NCBI RefSeq assembly: GCF_964188315.1
Contig: NC_135667.1
Coordinates: 20,894,001 to 20,958,000 of the forward strand
Origin: Podarcis muralis
Lineage: Eukaryota
Length of the DNA: 64,000 bases
Direction: 5' to 3'
Below are positions 14,818-45,886 of this stretch, piece after piece; positions within the stretch are counted from its first letter, which is position 1; every line of letters begins with the position of its first letter. A program made the translations under genes and the position numbers. Below the pieces are notes generated by a model. It had not been told where the DNA came from. It made no database searches and worked only from the letters and a program-made list of their open reading frames with translations.

Positions 14818-15685
14818 GGTATCTGGATTATGGTGTCTGTTTGGGGCACGGGACGGATGTAGGGTGTGTGTGTGTGTATATATATATGGATGTGGCTTCA
14901 TATATATGATAGAGGGCAACCCTAGAACCTGTATGCCAGCAATCACCTCTGAGCATTTGTAGACTCTTAACCAACATCTCTTTCTCCCTAGGTTGAAAGG
15001 TTCCTTTGCCGGTTGCTCCAGTCACCTATATGCAGAATGCATTACCTGGTTGGCCTAAGGACACTGTCTTCCCAGTCACCCTCAAATATTGCCGTAACTT
15101 ATTGCCCTTCTTTGCACTTTGCATGACACATCCTGAGAATTTTCCACAATACTATAGAATCTTGGTAGCAAGATTCAGAAGCTTGACTGTCCATGTGGAA
15201 CTGGTCTTCTAACACTCCCCACCCCCCCAGCCCGCAAAGCATTCTGGGTTGTTTATGTCTCTTTGCTAAATAAAGAACTGGTAATTTCATCGTTGTTGTA
15301 CTTGAAAGGGAATTGGTGCAGGATTATGGATGGGGAGAGATGCCTAGAAGGGTCTGAACAGAGTGTGCAGGGTTCAGGTGAACAGATAAGTCTTGGCAAT
15401 TGCTAAACAGTGCACTGGGATTCTAACTTTGGTTTCTACTTCAACTGAAATGAACCTCAGAGGTTCCTCGCTTCCTGGAGCACTGCAGCCTGCATTCGGT
15501 TACTGGGGACGACAGAGTATTAGAGTATTAGAGACATTATGCAACATTATTGCTTCCTCGACTTGGGATGCTTACACACAAGGCTTTTAAAGTGGAATTG
15601 CTGTGCTTCATCCACTCTTACTTATGCTCCATCTTTCAGTTTTCAAAAGCACGGCACCAGGCAGTTTCATCATTAAAGCAACAAG

Positions 15686-15814: not shown

Positions 15815-16626
15815 GTAACAAGTCATTTTTTAAAAAAAAATTAGCATTAAATCAAGCCGATCAAACAGATCCACAAGGAGACGGAAATTAAAGGAGGCCA
15901 AAAGCTTATCAGAATACAGTGTAAACAAAATTTATGGCTCCAGAGAAACACTTGGCTGTCCTCTGTGCAACACAGTAGAGGATGATAGGGATGCAGGCTA
16001 CTGGATTATTTTATTTTTTGCTTTTCCTTGGATTCACAGAGTCCTGAAGTTATTGCTGCTCATTTTGTGAACAAAAGTCATATAATACCCAAACCTGCCC
16101 AGCTCCATTCGCCTCTAAGTGGAACGTTGGTTGGGGGAACCTCTTCTGTTTACGAGGAGTTGGCATACACTGATGGATGGAACAAGTCACAGCCACTGCC
16201 GCTCTTAATCTTATCTTCCATATGTTTTGTAAGCACAAGCCTCTTGGCGCGGGACCTTTGGGGCAGAGGGTGATGCCCTGCAGCCAGGTTCTTGAATCGA
16301 CTATCTGCCCAAGGCAAATGCCATTTTTATTCCACACCCAAGTCGCCACCGGCATTCAAGATAGGCCAGATGTTTCTTGCATAATAACCACGGGAATACT
16401 GGGTAGGGACAACAACAGATAGACAGGGTTGAGATCACAGGGGCAGTGCCAGGCAAGCACAAACACCCCATTATCTTGGGGTGCCAGAGAGTGTTGAGGT
16501 GCCCTTACAGTCTGCTGTCTCTGCTGATAACGGAAGCAGGCACGTAAGCCGTCCCCCCTTGGCTGTGTTTTGCTGTGCTGTTAGGGACTTCCACAATCTC
16601 CAGAAGAACAGTCATTGCTTGCAGGG

Positions 16627-19600
16627 ATGGGCTTCTTCACGTTGATCCTCCTCACCTCCTCCTGCTTCCTTGGAAAAGCCGGTGAGTTGCCTGCTTTGAA
16701 ATTGAAGGAGGTGGGCAGCAAAGGCATCTTAAGAGTTGGAAGAGACTTGAGAGGCCAAGATCTAGTTCAGCCACCTGCTCAATGCAGGATGGCACTACTG
16801 CAAGGTTGCTGGTGGTACCAGTGGCCCTCCAGATGTGGCTGGACTACACTCCCATCATCTCTGACCATGGGCCGTGTTGGCTGGGGCTGATGGGAGTCCA
16901 AGAAATCTGCAGGGCCATGGGTTATCCATCTCCAGACTGCAGCACCCCTGGAAGATGGTCCTCTAGACTCCAGCCAAGGAGTGCCCACCACTTCCCAAGG
17001 AAGTCAGACTTAATATAGCAGTATTATTCACAATTATCCACTATTCTGGAAAGCAATGTGCAACCACTTAAGTGGAGCGGTTGTAGGGGATGGCACTTGG
17101 CATGAAGTGTTGCTGGGCTGGAGAAGGGAGCAGAGAGCAGGGGAGGGACAGTGTTGTTTGTGACTTGCTTGTGAACCACCAGACACATTGTTTTTAACTA
17201 CTGTCAGTCATCTGGGGAGCAACCTGGTGCCTCTGCAAGCTCACAAGGTTTGCTCCCAGCCTTTCAGTACTTTAACACGGGTACATTACCTTTGAACATG
17301 GGGATTCCATCTTCCCAGTACCATATTTTTATATTTGTTTTTACATCAATATCTATCAATAGATTGCAATCTTTTGCAATCTGATCTTGTGGGCAGTTTT
17401 TGCTGCTAGGCAATTATCGATATAATTTGGCAGCCATCGAGCCCATCTTTAATGTGGAATTAAGTAAACTGTGTGTTTCATAAAGAAGAACTTTTGCTTG
17501 CCCTGAACCTATTTCTAATCAACACCATTGGGGTGGCTCAAGGTCTTTCCAGGTGACCTGCTCATTTGTCCCGATTTGTTTGAGAGGAGCTTAGATGGCC
17601 TTGCACCAAAGCAAGTGCAATCCAACGCTTTTGATGCCTTTCCTTGTCACTTTCCTTATCGCAAGAAGTCTGACCTTTTGGGGAAGCATGTTTGTTGCAC
17701 GAGACCTCCCAATCCCTTGCAGTTGTGGGACCTGAATTTACCTGTATGTGACTAAATCCCACCCGAATACAGTGAAAGCCTGGAAGCAACCCCTGAATGA
17801 AGTTAAATTGGCTTATCTGAATTGGGTGCAGTAATTTGACTGGCAAGAGCCTTCCAAGGATTTGGAAAAAGTCTCTTCTCAATCCTCTTAGCTGGTAAGC
17901 TTTTAGGTACAGATGCATGGAACTTAACCCAGGACAGTCTACAAGTAAGAGATCTGCTCATTTACTGAGCTATTTAGGCAAGATGGCCCATGGAAGACCG
18001 ATCACTGGATGATCTTTGGCTGTGTGGCTTCTCAGTTTGATGCCGTTTAAGATGGTCCTTAGATTTCCCCAATAATTATATTTAGGGCCACATAGGCATC
18101 ACTGATAAAGAGGAAACACATAACTTTTTTAAAAAAAGATATATTTGTGTAAAATCTGCATGTGCTAATTTGTATGTTTGGATGTAAATACAGACACAGT
18201 CACTATAATTGAAACAAAAATGCAATCCATCTCAACATCCTGGGGAAGACTGTGACCTGTGTAGATGGTCCATTTCAAGGCCCCTGTCACATGGAAGACG
18301 GAATTGTTGAGCTGAAAAGGGGCCCCAAGGATCATCTAGTCCAACCCCTTGCAATGCAGGAATGTGCAACTGTCCCATATGGGGATCAAACCTGCAACCT
18401 TGGTGTCATCAGCACCACGCTCTAACCAACTGAGCTATCAGGTGTCCAGTGGTTGTATTTTCTCAGTTAAGCAGGCAGCAACCCAAATGGAATGATAAAG
18501 TAGGATGCGCTGCCTGCCACCCTAAGGCCAATTCACACATGCCTGCATATTCATTGATTTCTCAGCACTTGCCAAACGGCAGCTGACTGTGAGACCTGAC
18601 TCCTAAGCAGAAGAGGAGAGCTCTTCTGATGTGTCTGTTCTGTGTTGCTTGACCCAGCTGGGAAGCTGCAAGTGCAGGCCGAGCCCTCTCTGGTGAAAGC
18701 TGCGGTTGGAGATGATGTCTTGCTGAATTGCATCTTTACTGTGGACGAGCCTACCGTGGACCTCAGCCGACTCTCAATCCTCTGGTTCCACCGGGGCAGG
18801 CAGCTGGCGGAATTTGACGATGTGGTGACCACCTCCGGGGAAGGCGTCAGCCTGAGCCGGGAAGAGCTGGGGAATGGCAATGCGTCCTTGCTCATCTCCC
18901 GGGTTGGCACTGGAAACTCTGGCAACTACAGATGCTACGTTACATACACGCTGGAAGTGCGCATCCGGGAAGTGACTTTGCAAGTTGCAGGTAAGAGAGG
19001 TGGATGGTGTGGCAGGTGGTGTGTGTGTGTGTGCGCGCGCGTGAGCGCAACCAAGCACCAACAGGACACAACATAACATTTGAAGATTAGGAAAGGTTGT
19101 GGAGAAAAGGGGTCAAGTTTACTGCATGTATGGTGTTAAAGGAAAATATTATGAAAATGATGTATAGATGGTACTTAACCCCTGTAAAATTAATAATATG
19201 TATTTTTTTATCTCCCCCCCCCCCACTCCATTTTTAAAGTTTTATTTTCTACATTACTGGATTCAAGGCAATTATTGTCCAAATATGCAACAAAAGTCAC
19301 CTTGCCACCCTACATTCATTCAGAGTATATTAACTGAATAATCCCTTTCACGCACAGCACAAGATAATTTATCTATACAATATCAGCAGATAATCAAACA
19401 AAACTGCACCCATCAATTCCAATTTAAATAATTTACAAATCAATAGCAAATAGCCACAGGTTGACACAGAATTGTGTGACTATCCTAGAAACCCATCCCC
19501 CCCCCATTCTTCACTGCTCTCTCTCTCTCTCTCTCTCTCTCTGAATCCCCCTTCAGTAAATATCTATTCCTAGCCCCCCTCTCTTTTGAATACATTCCCC

Positions 19601-20392
19601 TTTCAAACACCCTATGAAAGAGAAAGGCTTGTTTTCCTCTGGAGACTTCCAAAATGCAGCCTTTACCTTCTACATTGGTTCATTTTATTTCCAGTTTAAT
19701 TGGGCTTATAGTCACATTTTAAAAATCAAGTGAGCCTAGCTAACATCTATAAATCTTAGATATCAACAAAAAGACACTCACCTGTCTTCCCCCTGCTCCC
19801 TACATGATGTTAATAATTTGGGGTACATTAAAGGCATACATTTTGCACCACAAAAGAAAAGCTTTTGCTTTCTTCTAATTTACAAGTAACTCCTGCCTTG
19901 ATTTGCCTGCAGGTGGTGTGCCTTACTCACCCTAGGCGACTAGGCAGGTAGCTATGAACAAAGCCATATCAAATAGAGGTGGAAAAAGACTTGCCCAATG
20001 CCTAAACATTACTACAGTGCCTTGTAATTCTGCGTAGCAATTTCAGTTTTTGGAATTTGTATGGACTGTATTTAAACGTGGAAGAAGTACAGAAGATATT
20101 GATGGGTCCATCACAAATGTCTCAGCTTTGATTTCTGTGTTTCATTCATTCATTTCTAACCCTACTGTGTGTTGCATGCTGATACTAATTCCCTGCAGAC
20201 CCCGAGGAAGATCTGGAAGATTCCTTTTCATCCCCGTGTCTCAGCCGTTCAGATATCCTGAGCAAGCTGGGTCAAATTGAGGAAGCTGTGAAGCAACTCG
20301 AGGCCAAACTCCAGGAGCTCGTGACCAGCAAGAGGGCCACAAGATGCAGTTCTGAAGTTGCCTCCCCGACCATGCCAGAGCCCTCACGCTGA
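16627..20392 (+). CDS. Predicted secreted single IgV (B7-H6/NCR3LG1-like) protein with C-terminal coiled coil, 193 aa
   Basis: Exon 1 16627-16681 encodes a signal peptide (MGFFTLILLTSSCFLGKA). Exon 2 18658-18990 encodes a V-set domain (LLNC..ILWF..GNASLLI..SGNYRCYV..VTLQV). Exon 3 20199-20392 encodes DPEEDLEDSFSSPCLSRSDILSKLGQIEEAVKQLEAKLQELVTSKRATRCSSEVASPTMPEPSR*. Both junctions are phase-1 GT-AG. The family assignment is by resemblance only. Confidence 0.8.
18301..18439 (-). mobile_element. tRNA-Ile(GAT)-headed SINE with CR1-derived tail
   Basis: Minus strand GATAGCTCAGTTGGTTAGAGCGTGGTGCTGATGACACCAAGGTTGCAGGTTTGATCCCC, then TTCCTGCATTGCAAGGGGTTGGACTAGATGA like the CR1 3'UTR at 31918-31990. 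A second copy lies at 28441-28570 (-). Confidence 0.75.
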
Positions 20393-21382
20393 TTGCATTT
20401 CTGCACTGCTGCAAATCAAAATAGGCTTCAAACCCATTTAGCTTAAACTTCCCGTGTTATGCAAGTAAATGTGGAAACTGTAGCTCTGTGACAGGGCTTA
20501 GAGTCTCTTGACAAATCATTCCTGCAATATCTTAATTCCTAGGATTCCCTGGGGGGGGGGGATGTTATGACCATTAAACCAGCTTCAGAATTAATACTGT
20601 GTTGAAGGGCATTGCATGTACTGAATGGCAGTGGAGGGGTGGGGCTGAACTGACTATTTCTGAGTGCATCAGGGCCTGGAACCTGGTGGGGTGGAGACAG
20701 AGTTGGATTAAACAGGAGGCAACGCAGGGAACTGCTGAGGGCGCCAGCCTTGAGGAGTGTCTGGTTCGTTGACCACTCATCCTGATTTATTTGAGGGGAG
20801 ACTGAATGACATTGCCTCAGAGCAAGTGTCACCTCACACTTTCCAATGCATTTGCTCACCAGTAATCACCTTCCTTGTGGTAAAAAGCCCAATCTTTTGT
20901 AGAAGTGGGTTTCTTGCACAAGACCTCCCAATCCACTGTAACTATGTACCCTGAATTTGCTGGGATGTGACTGAATCCAACCCCAAAATGGTATGAATGG
21001 GGGGTGCGTGTTATTTCTAGATCTGCTCAACTATCAATAGCTGACTCAAATAGAATAAACACTTCATCTTCACCTATAAATCTGGCAATGACCTATGCGG
21101 ACAGCATGCATTACTCCTTTTTGAAAACAACATTAGAGAAGTTATTTAAAAACATAAAAATAGCTCTGTTAGATCAAGGCCAGTGGCCCACCTAGCACAT
21201 ACCTGTTCTCACAGTGGTCGGAATCTGCAATCAAGATCTGATCACCACAGCAACCTCCCAGCATTATGCATCCTGCTTTTGAGCTTTTGAGTGTGTTCTG
21301 GCTGACCAATTGATAAAGACCCAAGTTTTGGACTCCATGGACATGTGGTCAAATTCATTTGATATGTTCTAGCGTTATGATG

Positions 21383-21737
21383 GGATGCGGGTGGCGCTGT
21401 GGGTAAAAGCCTCAGCGCCTAGGGCTTGCCGATCAAAAGGTCGGCGGTTCGAATCCCCGCGGCGGGGTGTGCTCCCGTCGTTCGGTCCCAGCGCCTGCCA
21501 ACCTAGCAGTTCGAAAGCACGTCAAAGTGCAAGTAGATAAATAGGGACCGCTTACCAGCGGGAAGGTAAACGGCGTTCCGTGTGCTGCGCTGGCTCGCCA
21601 GATGCAGCTTGTCACACTGGCCACGTGACCCGGAAGTGTCTCCGGACAGCGCTGGCCCCCGGCCTCTTGAGTGAGATGGGCGCACAACCCCAGAGTCTGG
21701 CAAGACTGGCCCGTACGGGCAGGGGTACCTTTACCTT
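21383..21737 (+). mobile_element. Sauria SINE, second subfamily
   Basis: Shares the diagnostic core with the 4410 copy; has the (TTTACC) tail. Confidence 0.88.
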
Positions 21738-21774
21738 TAGCGTTATGTCAGTCCCACATTCTCTAGGTGCGCTA

Positions 21775-21867
21775 CATGGGCGGGGGCAAGAGGGGGGGCT
21801 GCCTCCCCTAAATCAATACAAATCTGAGCTTCTGCCCCCCCCCCTCCAAATCCTGGCTACTCCCATG
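21775..21867. mobile_element. 93-bp hAT-type mini-MITE
   Basis: CATGGG...CCCATG termini with a perfect 8-bp TSD GTGCGCTA. Confidence 0.7.
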
Positions 21868-21989
21868 GTGCGCTAGTCCTGGCTAGTACTCAGTAAAAAG
21901 CACTGCTTATGGTCAAGAGGCGCTCTTGTATTTTTCAATTACACAGCCCAGTGCACTGAGAAAAAAAACACACACAAAAACCGAATTAA

Positions 21990-22720
21990 GCTCTGGGGAA
22001 ATGCAACTCCTGGTTAAAGGCACAAGTCTGAGCCACCCGCTCCTTCGCCAGGAGAGGCACGCGGAAAACACACGCCGAGGGGCTTTCGCTTTAAGAGCCT
22101 CCCACTGGACTCTGGCTGGGGTACAACCTGGGTGTCGCTTAGCTTGGAAAGCGCTGAGGCAGCAGCAGCCTCCGGAGGGGGAAGGGGACGGCCAGGGGCC
22201 TGTTGCAAGAACCAGCCTGGAAGGGACGAGAGAAGCTCAGCAGCCCCCAGCATGGAAGGCTTGTAAGCGACTGATTCCCCCACCTCGCAAAACAATAACC
22301 GTGCCCGCCCCCTTCCCAGTGCCCACACTTCGCGCCCCTGCCCCACCCCCGCTTGCTTTTTGCAAGAGTGCCCTATTTTCCTAATACTCGTAATGGCACA
22401 AGAGGGTGGGGGATGCGTGCGCACGGGACAGGGCGTAATAAACGTAATATTGGCGCCACTCAAAGGTCCCTGAAACTAACATGTCGCTCCCTTACATGAA
22501 GTTTTGCAGTTAAGTTTGCTTGCTGCCGTAATGCAGGAGAATCTCATCAAGGAGAGTCCAAAAATGCAGGTAGCTGCGTCGATGCCTTCGACTGAAATGA
22601 ATAAAAGGTGCATCGCACAACGCCTAGTCCATTAGGGTCAGCTGGTAGCCATGGAGTCACGTGCTGGCAAAAGGTGGAATTTGTCGCTCGGGAGTGCGGA
22701 GGCTGGAGTTTCAGTTAGCC
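21990..22720 (+). promoter_or_regulatory. CpG-rich probable promoter of the ADPRH-like gene
   Basis: Locally high CpG density, GC boxes (CCGCCCC), an NRF1-like TGCGTGCGCA near 22414 and an E-box GTCACGTG at 22656-22663, about 1-1.7 kb upstream of the first recognised coding exon. Confidence 0.45.
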
Positions 22721-23730
22721 AGCTTAGCCCTACATAGCAAGGCTGTTGTGATAAATAGGCCACGCCCACATCCATGTATCAGTGGAGGGAGAGTGGTGAT
22801 CGCATGCAAAAACTTTGAAGCCTCGCGTATTGCACACAGCTTGCCAGGCAGTTGGGTCGCTTGTGAGGCTCGTTTGGAACAGTTTATAACAGATTGTTGG
22901 CCAATTTGTGCTTTTCCCGACATCTCTTTAAGGTAAAGATAAGACATCTTGGTACTGCACACTTGTAAAAGGCCACAAAACATCCGAGGGCGAGGGAAAG
23001 CAAGGAATGGGTCTCATTCAGGGAGACTTTGGCCATCTCCCTTTGCAATCCTGTGCATGTTTATGTGCAAGTATATGCCATTCATTTCCCACTGAGTAAG
23101 CATGCAGAGGACTGTAGCCTTAGCGTTTGCCCCAAGGCAAAATGCATAACCTCTTCATAGCGCATGTTAGATTCTATGTTCAATATTCTAAAAATGGCAC
23201 ATACTTGCTTTACGTGACCTTTGAGCCCCTTTATGCTCCATTTTCTCCCTCCCTACCCAAAATCTGCAGCTACCACAATGAGGCCAACACGTCATACATC
23301 CGATGTAATGGGCTTTTAGTCTATCGAAGCTTATGTATGTCACACAAACCCATTAGTCTTCAAGGCACAGCGAGCCTCCTTTTGGGGCGCATGCGATAGC
23401 AGACGTTATCCCTACAGCATCTTTGCACTGCCTCCCCACCACCCACCCAGCGCAAATGTCATACTGATGTTGTGGAAATAGCAATTGCGCCTAATGTCAC
23501 TGGTGGCAACTATTGATTGACCCTTCAGGGGTTGGTTGCTTGGTTATGGCTTCAGTGCATAGCCCTCCCCTGCGTATATAAGCAGCATGAACTGTGCAAA
23601 ACAAGAAATGCTACTCAGTTAATACAGGTTGAAGAATTCAGATTTTGTCAGGAGACTATTTGGTTGTTGCTGTTTGTATGTATGAAGTATACAAACACCT
23701 GTCTATGCACGTTCCCACGGCAGCCCCCAG

Positions 23731-28776
<5,046 letters not shown>

Positions 28777-30509: not shown

Positions 30510-33500
30510 TCAAGGTCTCAGTGGAGTCTGTGCGAGGTACAAATAATTGTTGGAAGTAGCAGCTAGGACCCCACGGGGGCTGACATGAGTACTGTAGACA
30601 CCTCCAGGCAGGTCATTCAGTACCCCTGTGCTCTGGCAGCAAAGCAAGAGAAGACAACACATCAGAGAAGGCAGAAAGCTGTATTCCCCAGATCTCTTCT
30701 TCCTGCATCCCACCAACCCTTTCCATCTCCTTTCTAAAAACCAACTATCACTGAGTCATGCAACCTGAGAACATAGGAGCATCTAGACCAGCCTCCTGTT
30801 TCCAATAGAGGCCAGGCAAATGCTTACAACTTGCAGGTTCTCAAACTTGTATTCAGAAATGTACCCTCCATTGGTGATTCTCAAAACACTGCCCCCTCAG
30901 TTAAGGTTACCAGATTTTTTTCAATGAATCTGGGGACACTTTTCAACTTCAATGGATTTTGTATGGGGACTGATTTGTAAATCCGTGGACTGTCACCGGA
31001 AAGTCTGGTAACCTTACCCTCAGTAGACCACCTGAAAATGGCTGAAAACCTCAGTGGGACACTTATTTTTGCTTGCTTCAGTGCCAACATGAAATTTGCA
31101 GATCAGATTTGCAGATGACACCAAACTGGGAGGGGTGGCTAACACCCCAGAGGACAGGATCACACTTCAAAACGACCTTGACAGATTAGAGAACTGGGCC
31201 AAAACAAACAAGATGAATTTTAACAGGGAGAAATGTAAAGTATTGCACTTGGGCAAAAAAAATGAGAGGCACAAATACAAGATGGGTGACACCTGGCTTG
31301 AGAGCAGTACATGTGAAAAGGATCTAGGAGTCTTGGTTGACCACAAACTTGACATGAGCCAACAGTGTGACGCGGCAGCTAAAAAAGCCAATGCAATTCT
31401 GGGCCTCATCAATAGGAGTATAGCATCTAGATCAAGGGAAGTAATAGTGCCACTGTATTCTGCTCTGGTCAGACCTCACCTGGAGTACTGTGTCCAGTTC
31501 TGGGCACCACAGTTCAAGAAGGACACTGACAAACTGGAATGTGTCCAGAGGAGGGCAACCAAAATGGTCAAAGGCCTGGAAATGATGCCTTATGAGGAAC
31601 GGCTAAGGGAGCTGGGCATGTTTAGCCTGGAGAAGAGGAGGTTAAGGGGTGATATGATAGCCATGTTCAAATATATAAAAGGATGTCACATAGAGGAGGG
31701 AGAAAGGCTGTTTTCTGCTGCTCCAGAGAAGTGGACACGGAGCAATGGATCCAAACTACAAGAAAGAAGATTCCACCTAAACATTAGGAAGAACTTCCTG
31801 ACAGTAAGAGCTGTTCGACAGTGGAATTTGCTGCCAAGGAGTGTGGTGGAGTCTCCTTCTTTGGAGGTCTTTAAGCAGAGGCTTGACAACCATATGTCAG
31901 GAGTGCTCTGATGGTGTTTCCTGCTTGGCAGGGGGTTGGACTCGATGGCCCTTGTGGTCTCTTCCAACTCTATGATTCTATGATTCTATGAACATCATCA
32001 ACATTATATGGATGATTATATTATAAACAAACCACAGGCATTAAATCAGTGTCTTGTTGACCTGTTTGATTAATCCTGGTCAATCAAAAGGGCCTCAATT
32101 TCCATGTCAGAAAAAACAACAAGTGCAGGTCCAAATACAGATACTTTTGGTTGTTCCAGAAACTCTCAGCAAATCAGCTGGATGGAGCTTGCGGACCACC
32201 ACTGGTCCACAGACTACAGTTTAAGAACTTCTGGACCATCTTTGATGGGGCTACACCATTTGACCATCTAACCCAGTACTGTCTTCTCTGATTAACAGCA
32301 GCTCTCCAAGATCTCAGGCATAGACCTTTCCCATCACCCACAATGCCAGTTTCCTTGATATTGAGACGCCAGAGGGTAATGAATTTGGGGCTTCTCCACA
32401 TGATGCCTCTGCTCCCCCACTGAGCCACAGCTGTTTCCCACAAGCGACCCCAGCTAAGCCACCATACCATGAGGATTCTCCTGTCAATGAGCCGACATAA
32501 GTTATTCCGGCTCCCACCAGCTACAATATGGTCAACACCGAGGAAGTGGCAGGTATAAATCTGGGGAAGGAGGAAGAAGAGAATCAGGCAGAAGGACAGA
32601 ATGAAGAAAGGGGAACATTTTGAGTCCCACCATGCCATACTGCCAGGAAGGACTAGCATCTCACTAGCACCTCACTAGAAGATGGGAAAGGGGACCCTCT
32701 CAGGAATCTAGTACATTTTATGACCAGATCTCTTTGGTTGATGAGGAGCCAGGCCTGGAGAACACACACGATGCTTAGCCCAAAGGAAGGGTTGGGAGGA
32801 ATGGGGTCAAAAAAGGGTCTTCAACCTGCGAGTGGCCCCGGAAGTCTTCTGGGATGTCCATGATCTTGGAGCCAGTTTCAGCTTCCCAAATCTGGTTGAA
32901 GTAAAAAGTAGTATTTGTGTTAAACCCCCCCTTTTTAAAAAAAAAAAAAATCGACATTTTTGAAAACACATACATTATTTACACATGCACAGTTTATTTT
33001 TTAGCAATGTATCTCTCACTACTTCTAATTAAAGTCAAACTACACCCCCTGTAGGGACACGGGTGGTGCTGTGGGTTAAACCACAGAGCCTAGGACTTGC
33101 CAATCAGAAGGTCGGTGGTTCGAATCCCCACAATGGGGTGAGCTCCCGTTGCTCGGCCCCTGCTCCTGCCAACCTAGCAGTTCGAAAGCACATCAAAGTG
33201 CAAGTAGGTAAATAGGTACCGCTCCGGTGGGAAGGTAAACGGCGTTTCCGTGCGCTGCTCTGGTTTGCCAGAAGCAGCTTAGTCATGCTGGCCACATGAC
33301 CCGGAAGCTGTACGCCGGCTCCCTCGGCCAATAAAGCGAGATGAGCGCTGCAAGCCCAGAGTCGGCCATGACTGGACCTAATGGTCAGGGATCCCTTTAC
33401 CTTTACACCCCCTGTGGGATTTGACTTAGTTTTTAATTATTAGCAAACTTGAGGGGGCTGAGTTTTGGGGAAAGAGAACCCTGAGCTAGAATATTTAATC

Positions 33501-44811: not shown

Positions 44812-45886
44812 NNNNNNNNNNNNNNNNNNNNNNNNNNNNNNNNNNNNNNNNNNNNNNNNNNNNNNNNNNNNNNNNNNNNNNNNNNNNNNNNNNNNNNNNN
44901 NNNNNNNNNNNNNNNNNNNNNNNNNNNNNNNNNNNNNNNNNNNNTGAAGAACTGGGGCAGCTCTTTTGCCCGTCCAAAGTTCTTAGTGCAAGTCAATTAA
45001 TTTAAGAAAATTGCAGGCCTAATTTATTTATTAATTAATGCATCAATTAGAACAGATGGGGGTCATTTGACTCGTATTTCATGCACTAGACAACAGACCG
45101 AATTGTGTGGCACACCTGATACCTGACTGGATGCCTCTGCCGCTGCTGCTGCTGCTGCTGCTGTTTAATGAATGCCAGAGTCTGCCGTAGATGAACGGTA
45201 ACTCTTTTACTGTCCGAAAGTGACTATAGAACATGCCTAACAATCGCACTAATGCAGTCCCTGCATTGCTTCAGTCCCTAGTTCTAGTTTCATTTTCCAT
45301 GCTGTTCCTTACAAGGCATTGCCTGTCTGGTGAGGGTTATATCTCAGCACAACTCCCACTTGTAGAAATAAACTAAAACAAACACATCAAAACAAGAAGC
45401 TCTTTACATTTTAAAAAGACAAATGCTCTTTATTTTCCTATCCACACCCACCAATGCTCTTCATCCACCACACTCCATACCTCTATAAAGATACTTTATC
45501 CACCCCCACACAAACACATATTGGGTTCACAACCTTTTTCCCCCTGGTAGAGACAGCTGCTGCATCTTAACCCAGGTACACTACAGGTGAACCTGATCCC
45601 GTCTCCCCATCCCAGTGACAGGCAGAACCTGTGCGAAAAGATATCCAAGGAAGTGGGTTGGGAAAGGGGTGGGGGGTCCCCCTGAACCCACCCGAAGCAC
45701 TCTAGCTCTAACTGTATAAAATAACATGGCTGCCCTAAAGAACCCGCTGCACTATANNNNNNNNNNNNNNNNNNNNNNNNNNNNNNNNNNNNNNNNNNNN
45801 NNNNNNNNNNNNNNNNNNNNNNNNNNNNNNNNNNNNNNNNNNNNNNNNNNNNNNNNNNNNNNNNNNNNNNNNNNNNNNNNNNNNNN
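44812..45886. other. Two assembly gaps (N at 44812-44944 and 45757-45886)
   Basis: Runs of N in the intergenic region upstream of CABP5. Confidence 1.

What the first reader, a model, noticed from the sequence alone, without database searches (positions are those of the whole stretch)
16627..20392. Secreted B7-H6-like IgV domain fused to a Cys-flanked coiled coil: a candidate soluble multimeric immune ligand next to LAT
Seen in sequence: a three-exon ORF of signal peptide, one V-set domain and a 64-aa tail with no hydrophobic TM. The tail has a perfect 4-3 heptad repeat over three heptads (I-xxx-L-xx-I-xxx-V-xx-L-xxx-L-xx-L in ILSKLGQIEEAVKQLEAKLQELV), with one Cys on each side (PCLS, TRCS). 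Established: B7-family ligands are normally V+C+TM membrane proteins, and short Cys-locked coiled coils drive oligomerisation in secreted proteins such as C4BP. Inference: this is a secreted, disulfide-linked multivalent IgV, perhaps a decoy or cross-linker for an NKp30/CD28-type receptor. I know of no named mammalian gene with this architecture, and it starts about 1.4 kb after the LAT polyA signal.
Basis: partly seen in the sequence, partly recalled or inferred. Interest (0 to 1): 0.8.

Follow-up and report, generated by a model that had tools for sequence, protein, structure and literature searches.

The report
Secreted PD-L1-like IgV with coiled-coil tail
This is a real three-exon wall-lizard gene for a small secreted protein, one B7/PD-L1-type immunoglobulin V domain on a short self-associating helix; it is conserved from frogs to lizards, was not found in mammals or birds, and has only automatic database names.

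Summary
Exons 16627-16681, 18658-18990 and 20199-20392 join through canonical GT-AG sites in phase 1/1. They give a 193-aa product: signal peptide, one IgV domain, an acidic linker, one helix (residues 146-177) and no transmembrane segment. That product is identical to RefSeq XP_028559904.2, "CD276 antigen-like isoform X1" of Podarcis muralis, so the model is already annotated, but only by automatic naming. The same architecture occurs in other lizards, turtles, salamanders, caecilians and frogs. Their automatic names disagree (PD-L1-like, CD276-like, NCR3LG1-like, VTCN1-like, tapasin-related, obscurin-like). A salamander RNA contig carries the uninterrupted coding sequence. No mammal, bird, crocodilian or fish protein with this tail was listed.

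Seven a/d core positions stay hydrophobic in 88-100% of 16 sequences. A cysteine just after the helix is kept in 13 of 16; the upstream cysteine in only 5 of 16. The IgV is closest to PD-L1, B7-H4 and B7-H3, not B7-H6. Between lizard families only the IgV and tail exons align, and no hidden transmembrane exon was found.

Most likely this is a soluble, self-associating, often disulfide-stapled B7-type ligand. Oligomer state, receptor and tissue remain untested. No paper on it was found. This scan had not noted it on other DNA.

The parts
15269..15274 (+). AATAAA taken as the polyA signal of the upstream LAT gene; marks the 1.36-kb intergenic gap
   Evidence: LAT (PF15234) is called upstream in the orthologous loci.
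16627..16681 (+). Exon 1: start codon and signal peptide (18 codons plus 1 base, phase 1)
   Evidence: It matches residues 1-19 of P0001 by tblastn. The hydrophobic N-terminus is conserved in all orthologues.
16682..18657 (+). Intron 1 (GT...AG); contains interspersed repeats
18658..18990 (+). Exon 2: one complete B7/PD-L1-type IgV domain (residues 19-130; Cys43-Cys111 pair; GNAS sequon at N93)
   Evidence: Pfam V-set/I-set. PDB profile search. Foldseek puts PD-L1 IgV first. AF2 pLDDT is 93-98. It is one of only two blocks that align with Anolis sagrei DNA.
18991..20198 (+). Intron 2 (GT...AG); microsatellites; no conserved or TM-like exon
20199..20392 (+). Exon 3: acidic linker, helix, Cys and short C-terminal peptide, then the TGA stop
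   Evidence: A tail HMM finds it only in amphibian and reptile family members. It is the second of the two blocks that align with Anolis DNA.
20237..20239 (+). Cys143, upstream of the helix (lineage-variable, 5 of 16 sequences)
20246..20344 (+). Predicted single alpha-helix, residues 146-178, with a/d core I149, L153, I156, V160, L163, L167, L170
   Evidence: AF2 predicts helix 146-178 and 146-177, with pLDDT about 90 over residues 150-170. Heptad statistics are; coordinates.
20345..20347 (+). Cys179, directly after the helix. A Cys at 177 or 179 is present in 13 of 16 family members; it is the candidate inter-chain disulfide.
20573..20578 (+). First ATTAAA after the stop; candidate polyA signal (others at 20707 and 21054)
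   Evidence: not verified by transcripts

Best explanation
The locus is an intact, conserved gene of Podarcis muralis. It encodes a small secreted protein: a cleavable signal peptide, one B7-family IgV domain whose nearest solved relative is the PD-L1 IgV, a flexible acidic linker, and one amphipathic helix of about 32 residues. A conserved cysteine follows the helix.

The helix most likely pairs in parallel with the same helix of other chains, forming a dimer or a small oligomer. The cysteine then locks the bundle in most lineages. The result would be a soluble particle carrying two or more IgV heads.

Such a particle could bind and cluster, or block, a still unknown IgSF receptor on leukocytes without cell-to-cell contact. 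The human secreted PD-L1 splice form works this way: it is active only because a tail cysteine dimerises it.

Shown here: gene structure, secretion-type architecture, conservation, heptad core, and absence of a membrane anchor. Inferred: self-association, disulfide linkage, immune ligand role.
For: **Gene model.**
- Canonical splice sites and a 193-aa ORF.
- The product is identical to RefSeq XP_028559904.2.
- The same three exons and phases were rebuilt in P. lilfordi, Lacerta agilis, Zootoca vivipara and Anolis sagrei.

**Distribution.** The architecture is conserved in lacertids, anoles, cordylid, anguid, geckos, two turtle paralogues, salamanders, caecilians and frogs.

**Transcript.** Logan contig L003 carries an uninterrupted 193-codon CDS with UTRs. 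The Pleurodeles gene spans 144 kb, so this contig is spliced mRNA.

**No anchor.**
- No 19-residue window of any tail reaches a mean Kyte-Doolittle hydropathy (KD19) of 1.0.
- No TM-like exon was found between 18991 and 23700.
- Only the IgV and tail exons align between lacertid and Anolis DNA.

**Helix.**
- AF2 predicts residues 146-177 at pLDDT about 90.
- The seven a/d columns are strongly hydrophobic in 88-100% of 16 sequences, and Cys177/179 is present in 13 of 16.
- In amphibians the Cys falls on a d position.
- The heptad run has p of about 4e-4 by shuffling.

**IgV.**
- The closest solved relatives are PD-L1, B7-H4 and B7-H3.
- dN/dS is 0.2-0.3.

**Functional precedent.** secPD-L1 (PMC6426808).
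Against: - No lizard transcript was recovered, so expression and tissue are unknown.
- The tail evolves fast: dN/dS is 0.6-1.1, from small counts.
- The Bombina tail has no Cys and Pelodytes lacks the C-terminal one, so a disulfide is not obligatory.
- The helix spans only about 3.5 heptads, and oligomer state could not be modelled because no multimer tool was available.
- No receptor is known. The extra CD28-family members absent from human that have tetrapod copies (CD28HL1, CD28X) are also absent from squamates (PMC11599192), so they do not fit this gene's distribution.
Confidence: 0.55

Rival explanations
1. The helix is a docking module for a different chain, either a membrane protein or the tandem paralogue. 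In that case the protein is a disulfide-linked subunit of a hetero-complex, possibly at the cell surface, not a free homo-oligomer.
For: - There is a single conserved Cys next to a short helix.
- Two tandem or paired paralogues exist in turtle, caecilian and Anolis sagrei.
- Several e positions (150, 157, 171) are hydrophobic, which widens the interface.
Against: - Lacertids carry a single copy in the window.
- No partner with a complementary helix was identified.
- The one g-to-e' pair that carries charge on both sides in the window protein (K152/E157) is compatible with parallel self-pairing (inference).
Confidence: 0.2
2. It is a secreted protein with a non-immune role, for example in plasma, mucosa, skin or the reproductive tract. 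On this reading the B7-type IgV reflects ancestry only.
For: - No expression data were obtained.
- No receptor is known.
- The tail is under weak constraint.
- The family is missing in mammals and birds, which keep the classical B7 system.
Against: - The IgV is under purifying selection and is closest to checkpoint ligands.
- It sits next to LAT, a lymphocyte gene, although linkage is weak evidence of function.
Confidence: 0.2
3. The main product is membrane-bound through an unrecognised exon, and the 193-aa form is a minor isoform or an annotation artefact.
For: - The closest non-tail relatives in lungfish, coelacanth and frogs are IgV-IgV-TM or V-C1-TM proteins.
- Alternative isoforms are annotated: Elgaria X2, Rhineura X2 and P. 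muralis X2.
Against: - No TM-like phase-compatible exon lies within 3.3 kb downstream or in intron 2.
- No further block is conserved with Anolis.
- None of the alternative isoforms has a TM.
- P. muralis X2 needs a 41-nt internal deletion without GT-AG ends.
- The salamander mRNA encodes the tail form.
Confidence: 0.03
4. The tail exon derives from a UPF0184/BBLN-type coiled-coil gene.
For: The window tail gives a weak Pfam hit to PF03670: E 1.1e-3, 19.8 bits, below the 21.5-bit cut-off.
Against: Only 1 of 16 family tails gives this hit. The tail profile matches generic coiled coils (Lpp, GCN4 chimeras, HA2, chemoreceptors) at E values of 1e-3 to 10, none of them a specific relative.
Confidence: 0.02

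Closest known systems
PD-L1 (CD274) and the B7-H4/B7-H3 group of the B7 family
   Same: - The N-terminal IgV has the B7 signature (GNASL, YRC, the Cys43-Cys111 pair).
- PD-L1 IgV is the best solved match by sequence profile (about 53 bits) and by Foldseek (TM by target 0.7-0.84, about 25% identity).
- The leader and IgV lie on separate phase-1 exons.
   Different: - It has no IgC domain, no transmembrane segment and no cytoplasmic tail.
- It ends in an acidic linker plus a helix.
- It is not in a known B7 locus but between LAT and an ARH1-like gene.
secPD-L1, the secreted human PD-L1 splice variant (PMC6426808)
   Same: A soluble B7 ligand whose C-terminal tail carries a cysteine. Covalent dimerisation through that cysteine makes it functionally active. 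This is the closest mechanistic precedent.
   Different: - secPD-L1 is a minor splice form that keeps IgV and IgC and has an 18-aa intron-derived tail without a coiled coil.
- Here the secreted form is the only product found here and has a dedicated, conserved helix exon.
B7-H6 (NCR3LG1)
   Same: It is a B7-family IgV, and several orthologues are auto-named 'NCR3LG1-like'.
   Different: - B7-H6 scores only 28.6 bits against the family profile, behind PD-L1, B7-H4, PD-L2 and B7-H3.
- B7-H6 is a V-C1-TM protein with a long cytoplasmic tail.
Butyrophilins and chicken BG proteins
   Same: An IgV of the extended B7/BTN superfamily combined with a heptad-repeat helix (established knowledge of BTN juxtamembrane and BG cytoplasmic coiled coils).
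   Different: - In BTN and BG the coiled coil is cytoplasmic, behind a transmembrane helix, and in BG it is built from many 21-nt exons.
- Here there is no TM, and one exon encodes the whole tail.
Cys-stapled oligomerisation helices of secreted proteins (C4BP, COMP, matrilins)
   Same: A short C-terminal amphipathic helix with neighbouring cysteine(s) that would multimerise a binding domain (established knowledge).
   Different: There is no sequence homology: Pfam gives no hit to those modules. The flanking cysteines are only partly conserved.
Hyperolius 'nectin-2-like' protein XP_068099138 (P0134)
   Same: A frog protein with Ig domains followed by a Cys and a long heptad tail and no TM. This looks like a convergent architecture.
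   Different: - It has three nectin-type Ig domains.
- Its tail is not detected by this family's tail HMM.

Membership tests
B7 family (CD80/CD86, PD-L1/L2, B7-H2 to B7-H7) | N-terminal IgV domain with B7-type sequence and fold | tested here: met
   The PDB profile search gives PD-L1 at 53 bits, VTCN1 at 43 and CD276 at about 30 per domain. The top 50 Foldseek matches are all PD-L1 IgV.
B7 family (CD80/CD86, PD-L1/L2, B7-H2 to B7-H7) | Membrane-proximal IgC domain | tested here: not met
   The product has one Ig domain only. No other exon is conserved with Anolis.
B7 family (CD80/CD86, PD-L1/L2, B7-H2 to B7-H7) | Type I transmembrane anchor | tested here: not met
   The KD19 maximum in the tail is below 1.0 in all orthologues. 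No TM-like exon was found.
B7 family (CD80/CD86, PD-L1/L2, B7-H2 to B7-H7) | Binds a CD28-family or NKp30-type receptor | not testable with these tools
   This needs binding assays. CD28HL1 and CD28X are absent from squamates (PMC11599192).
B7-H6 (NCR3LG1) orthologue | B7-H6 is the closest B7 member | tested here: not met
   B7-H6 (6yjp) scores 28.6 bits and ranks last of the 60 matches shown, behind PD-L1, VTCN1, PD-L2 and CD276.
Butyrophilin / BG | IgV followed by a TM and then a cytoplasmic coiled coil and/or B30.2 domain | tested here: not met
   There is no TM, no B30.2 domain and a single tail exon.
Parallel coiled-coil oligomerisation module | At least three heptads with hydrophobic a/d positions, conserved across homologues | tested here: met
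   Seven a/d columns are strongly hydrophobic in 88-100% of 16 sequences. Shuffle p is about 4e-4. The AF2 helix has pLDDT about 90.
Parallel coiled-coil oligomerisation module | Observed self-association and inter-chain disulfide | not testable with these tools
   No multimer prediction or biochemistry was available. Cys177/179 is present in 13 of 16 sequences and Cys143 in 5 of 16.
UPF0184 / BBLN (PF03670) | Pfam match above the gathering score, shared by family members | tested here: not met
   The hit scores 19.8 bits against a 21.5-bit cut-off, in 1 of 16 tails.

The most novel reading that the evidence does not exclude
This is the lizard member of an undescribed, roughly 350-My-old tetrapod family of humoral B7-type ligands. 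Members would be covalently oligomeric, secreted IgV 'soluble checkpoint' factors acting at a distance on an orphan receptor. Amphibians, turtles and squamates keep the family; mammals and birds have lost it.
Probability: 0.35. Interest if true: 0.75.

Novelty: new variant of a known kind. Interest (0 to 1): 0.55.

Why it matters
B7 ligands are textbook membrane proteins that act across a cell-cell contact. Soluble forms in mammals are shed fragments or minor splice variants. Here a dedicated gene makes only a soluble B7-type IgV on an oligomerising stalk, and it has been kept from frogs to lizards. That would add a humoral arm to the co-stimulation/checkpoint system of ectothermic tetrapods. 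It would also point to a receptor that is still unidentified. The mammalian and avian losses would give a dated example of immune-gene turnover. In practical terms, the scattered automatic names (PD-L1, CD276, NCR3LG1, VTCN1, tapasin-related, obscurin-like) should be replaced by one family name. Otherwise comparative studies will miscount true PD-L1 or B7-H3 orthologues in reptiles and amphibians.

Tried and rejected
- **UPF0184/BBLN origin of the tail.** Sub-threshold Pfam hit in 1 of 16 tails. Rejected as a chance coiled-coil resemblance.
- **Hidden TM or IgC exon.** No phase-1 open segment with KD19 of at least 1.9 exists. Two weak hydrophobic stretches lie in intron 2 (19663-19719 and 20134-20190), and neither was recovered as a separate conserved block against Anolis. 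Rejected.
- **GPI anchor.** The C-terminus is hydrophilic. Rejected from the sequence.
- **Lizard transcript evidence from Logan.** Exact-protein look-ups for P. muralis and Anolis carolinensis returned only genome records or nothing.
- **ESM Atlas and AFDB cluster searches.** They returned only generic V-set or IgV-plus-TM-helix proteins, and no informative relative.
- **Literature.** Searches by topic, by RefSeq accession and by SRA run found nothing on this family.
- **CD28HL1 and CD28X as cognate receptors.** Their distribution (absent from squamates) does not match this gene.
- **LAT or ARH linkage in turtle.** Nothing was found within 10 kb of the Emydura genes.
- **Second tandem copy.** None exists in the window.
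Full report
**1. What is in the sequence**

The + strand between 16627 and 20392 carries three exons.
- Exon 1 (16627-16681) opens with ATG and encodes a hydrophobic leader. It ends in phase 1 at a G|gtgagt donor.
- Exon 2 (18658-18990) follows a cccag acceptor, encodes 110 full codons and ends in phase 1 at G|gtaaga.
- Exon 3 (20199-20392) follows a cctgcag acceptor and runs to TGA.

The joined CDS is 582 nt and encodes 193 aa.

The exon 2 product matches the Pfam V-set, I-set and ig models. The tail has no hydrophobic segment: the best 19-residue Kyte-Doolittle mean (KD19) beyond the IgV is 0.18, against about 1.6 for a membrane span.

**2. It is an annotated gene of Podarcis muralis**

The spliced product is identical to P0172 = XP_028559904.2, "CD276 antigen-like isoform X1 [Podarcis muralis]". 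Close orthologues exist in P. raffonei, P. lilfordi, Lacerta agilis and Zootoca vivipara.

I rebuilt the same three exons, with the same phases and GT-AG sites, from the genomic loci of P. lilfordi, L. agilis, Z. vivipara and Anolis sagrei. In all four lacertids the gene order is LAT, this gene, then an ADP-ribosylglycohydrolase-family gene. LAT is also immediately upstream in A. sagrei. The AATAAA at 15269 is 1358 nt before the ATG.

**3. The architecture is a family feature**

Word-indexed searches and one exhaustive HMMER profile search of 1.84 billion representatives recovered proteins of 180-250 aa. All share the same layout: leader, IgV, a 'DP..K..EE(D/E)' acidic linker, a helix and a short C-terminus.

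They come from these groups:
- Lacertids, anoles, a cordylid (Hemicordylus) and an anguid (Elgaria).
- Geckos (Eublepharis, Sphaerodactylus).
- Turtles, with two paralogue lineages that lie in tandem in Emydura.
- Salamanders (Pleurodeles, Lissotriton, and one Logan contig) and a caecilian (Geotrypetes, two genes).
- Frogs (Ascaphus, Bombina, Pelodytes, Mixophyes).

An amphisbaenian (Rhineura) contributed only a truncated 124-aa isoform (X2) that lacks the tail.

An HMM built from the tails detects all of these.

After the family, the score in the word search drops from 147 to 91 bits. The nearest proteins without the tail are uncharacterised lungfish, coelacanth, bichir and frog proteins with two or more IgV domains, or V-C1, plus a transmembrane anchor.

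No mammalian, avian, crocodilian or teleost protein with this tail was listed. This is absence of detection in protein databases, not proof of loss. Snakes were also not seen, which I cannot interpret, because the clusters are represented at 50% or 90% identity.

Source names for the family are inconsistent: PD-L1(-like), CD276(-like), NCR3LG1-like, VTCN1-like, tapasin-related-like, obscurin-like, or uncharacterised.

**4. Evidence that the tail form is the real product**

- The Logan contig L003 (run SRR11300564, 1144 nt) has a 110-nt 5' UTR, the uninterrupted 193-codon CDS and at least 450 nt of 3' UTR. The gene of the related Pleurodeles protein spans 144 kb. The contig must therefore be spliced mRNA.
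- Between P. muralis and A. sagrei, the whole interval 16000-23800 gives only two blastn blocks: the IgV exon and the tail exon. This argues for coding constraint on the tail exon and against a hidden IgC or TM exon.
- No phase-1 open segment after any AG between 18991 and 23700 contains a TM-like stretch. The only hydrophobic stretches in any frame are weak (KD19 of 1.77 and 1.61) and intronic.
- The annotated alternative isoforms carry no TM. Elgaria X2 reads into the intron and Rhineura X2 is truncated. P. muralis X2 requires removal of 41 nt inside exon 3 with no GT-AG boundary.
- I found no lizard transcript contig. Lizard expression therefore rests only on the existence of the RefSeq models.

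**5. The helix**

AlphaFold2, run with the 16-sequence family alignment and the window's own protein as target, gives mean pLDDT 82.5. The IgV scores 93-98. There is one helix at 146-177 with pLDDT about 90 over residues 150-170. The linker (130-145) and the C-terminus (178-193) are disordered (an earlier model is).

In the family alignment, the columns of residues 149, 153, 156, 160, 163, 167 and 170 are strongly hydrophobic in 88-100% of sequences. The columns between them are polar. This is an a/d core kept in register from frogs to lizards. In the window protein alone, a run of seven such positions occurs in 87 of 200,000 shuffles.

Several e positions (150, 157, 171) are also often hydrophobic. 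By the usual coiled-coil rules this widens the seam and is compatible with more than two strands. That is inference only.

A cysteine lies at 177 or 179 in 13 of 16 sequences. In amphibians and one turtle paralogue it falls on the next d position (177), where parallel helices can cross-link. In squamates it sits two residues later, behind a Gly/Pro break. The upstream Cys143 is present in only 5 of 16. Bombina has no tail cysteine and Pelodytes lacks the downstream one. The 'Cys on each side' picture is therefore lineage-specific; the single downstream Cys is the conserved element.

The tail evolves faster than the IgV. Pairwise dN/dS is 0.6-1.1 for the tail against 0.2-0.3 for the IgV, from small counts. 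This is usual for linkers and coiled coils, whose pattern rather than sequence is constrained, but it is also a caution.

**6. Which IgV**

A profile of the family against all PDB sequences ranks as follows: PD-L1 IgV about 50-53 bits; B7-H4 42.9; PD-L2 37.5; B7-H3 29-32 per domain; B7-H6 28.6.

In Foldseek against the PDB, the top 50 matches are all PD-L1 IgV, with TM by target 0.7-0.84 and about 25% identity. 'B7-family, PD-L1-like' is therefore more accurate than 'B7-H6-like'. I could not build a named phylogeny.

**7. Mechanism proposed**

- Shown: a secretion-type architecture without an anchor, and a conserved amphipathic helix with an adjacent cysteine.
- Inferred: parallel self-association, stapled by a disulfide in most lineages, giving a soluble particle with two or more IgV heads. 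Multivalency is what makes soluble B7 ligands active.
- Precedent: the human secPD-L1 variant inhibits T cells because a tail cysteine dimerises it, whereas monomeric ectodomain is weak (PMC6426808).
- Unknown: the receptor. Of the extra CD28-family members absent from human that occur in tetrapods, CD28HL1 and CD28X were reported absent from squamates (PMC11599192). They do not fit this gene's distribution.
- Rivals: a hetero-complex subunit, a non-immune secreted protein, and a minor isoform of a membrane protein. They are weighed in the dedicated fields.

**8. Rejected leads**

The Pfam hit of the window tail to UPF0184/BBLN is below threshold and seen in 1 of 16 tails. The tail profile otherwise matches generic coiled coils at E values of 1e-3 to 10, none of them a specific relative. 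The ESM Atlas and AFDB clusters gave only generic V-set neighbours. Literature searches by topic, accession and run number found no description of the family. An earlier-findings search by words found nothing like it.

**9. Verdict**

It is wrong in two details: the B7-H6 affinity and the two flanking cysteines as a rule.

The gene model is already in RefSeq. What is new is recognising a coherent family, found here only in amphibians, turtles and squamates, of secreted B7-type IgV proteins with a coiled-coil stalk. That makes it a new architectural variant of a known kind.

Noticed in passing
window 23731-28776 (neighbour gene); L001 15425-22341; L006 15915-22909; L007 15547-23966: The downstream neighbour is an ADP-ribosylglycohydrolase (ARH1-like) gene in all four lacertids. 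In human, CD80 and ADPRH are close neighbours at 3q13.33 (my own knowledge). A cis-eQTL SNP in CD80 that affects both genes fits this (PMC6525733). The IgV gene plus the ARH1-like gene could therefore be a duplicated copy of a CD80-ADPRH pair. This was not tested.
   Followed up: partly
window 20251-20293: RefSeq isoform X2 of P. muralis (P0169, 167 aa) requires deleting 41 nt inside exon 3. None of the three possible boundary pairs is GT-AG. The deletion frame-shifts the helix, so this is probably an annotation or alignment artefact.
   Followed up: yes
window 18301-18437: A roughly 135-nt interspersed repeat in intron 1 also matches a second site inside the neighbouring ARH-like gene in P. 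lilfordi, L. agilis and Z. vivipara. It looks SINE-like by eye, but ARAGORN calls no tRNA there.
   Followed up: partly
window 17647-17764 and 20866-20986: Two diverged copies (about 68-76% identity) of another interspersed repeat: one in intron 1 and one in the 3' flank of the gene.
   Followed up: no
window about 31046-31950: An open segment of at least 269 aa is 80% identical at the protein level to sequence in the Anolis sagrei locus. It also matches the turtle locus. This is most likely a transposable-element ORF.
   Followed up: no
window 19027-19050 and 19519-19541: (GT)n/(GC)n and (CT)n microsatellites in intron 2.
   Followed up: no
window 44812-44944 and 45757-45886: Two runs of N, 133 and 130 bases long.
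   Followed up: no
P0020-P0022, P0025, P0035, P0038 (Protopterus annectens): Lungfish proteins with 2 to about 15 tandem copies of an IgV very close to this family's IgV score highest in the profile search. Some have mucin-like stalks and a TM but no helix tail. This may be a large lungfish expansion or fused gene models.
   Followed up: partly
P0134 (Hyperolius riggenbachi XP_068099138): A frog 'nectin-2-like' protein with three Ig domains, then a Cys and a roughly 70-aa heptad tail, and no TM. This is an apparently independent case of an Ig-plus-coiled-coil secreted architecture.
   Followed up: no
L004 6200-8785 and 10001-11545 (Emydura macquarii): Turtles carry two tandem paralogues of the family. 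One is squamate-like. The other is GC-rich and has three tail cysteines. Several other turtle RefSeq models of the first paralogue read through the intron after the IgV exon and miss the tail.
   Followed up: partly
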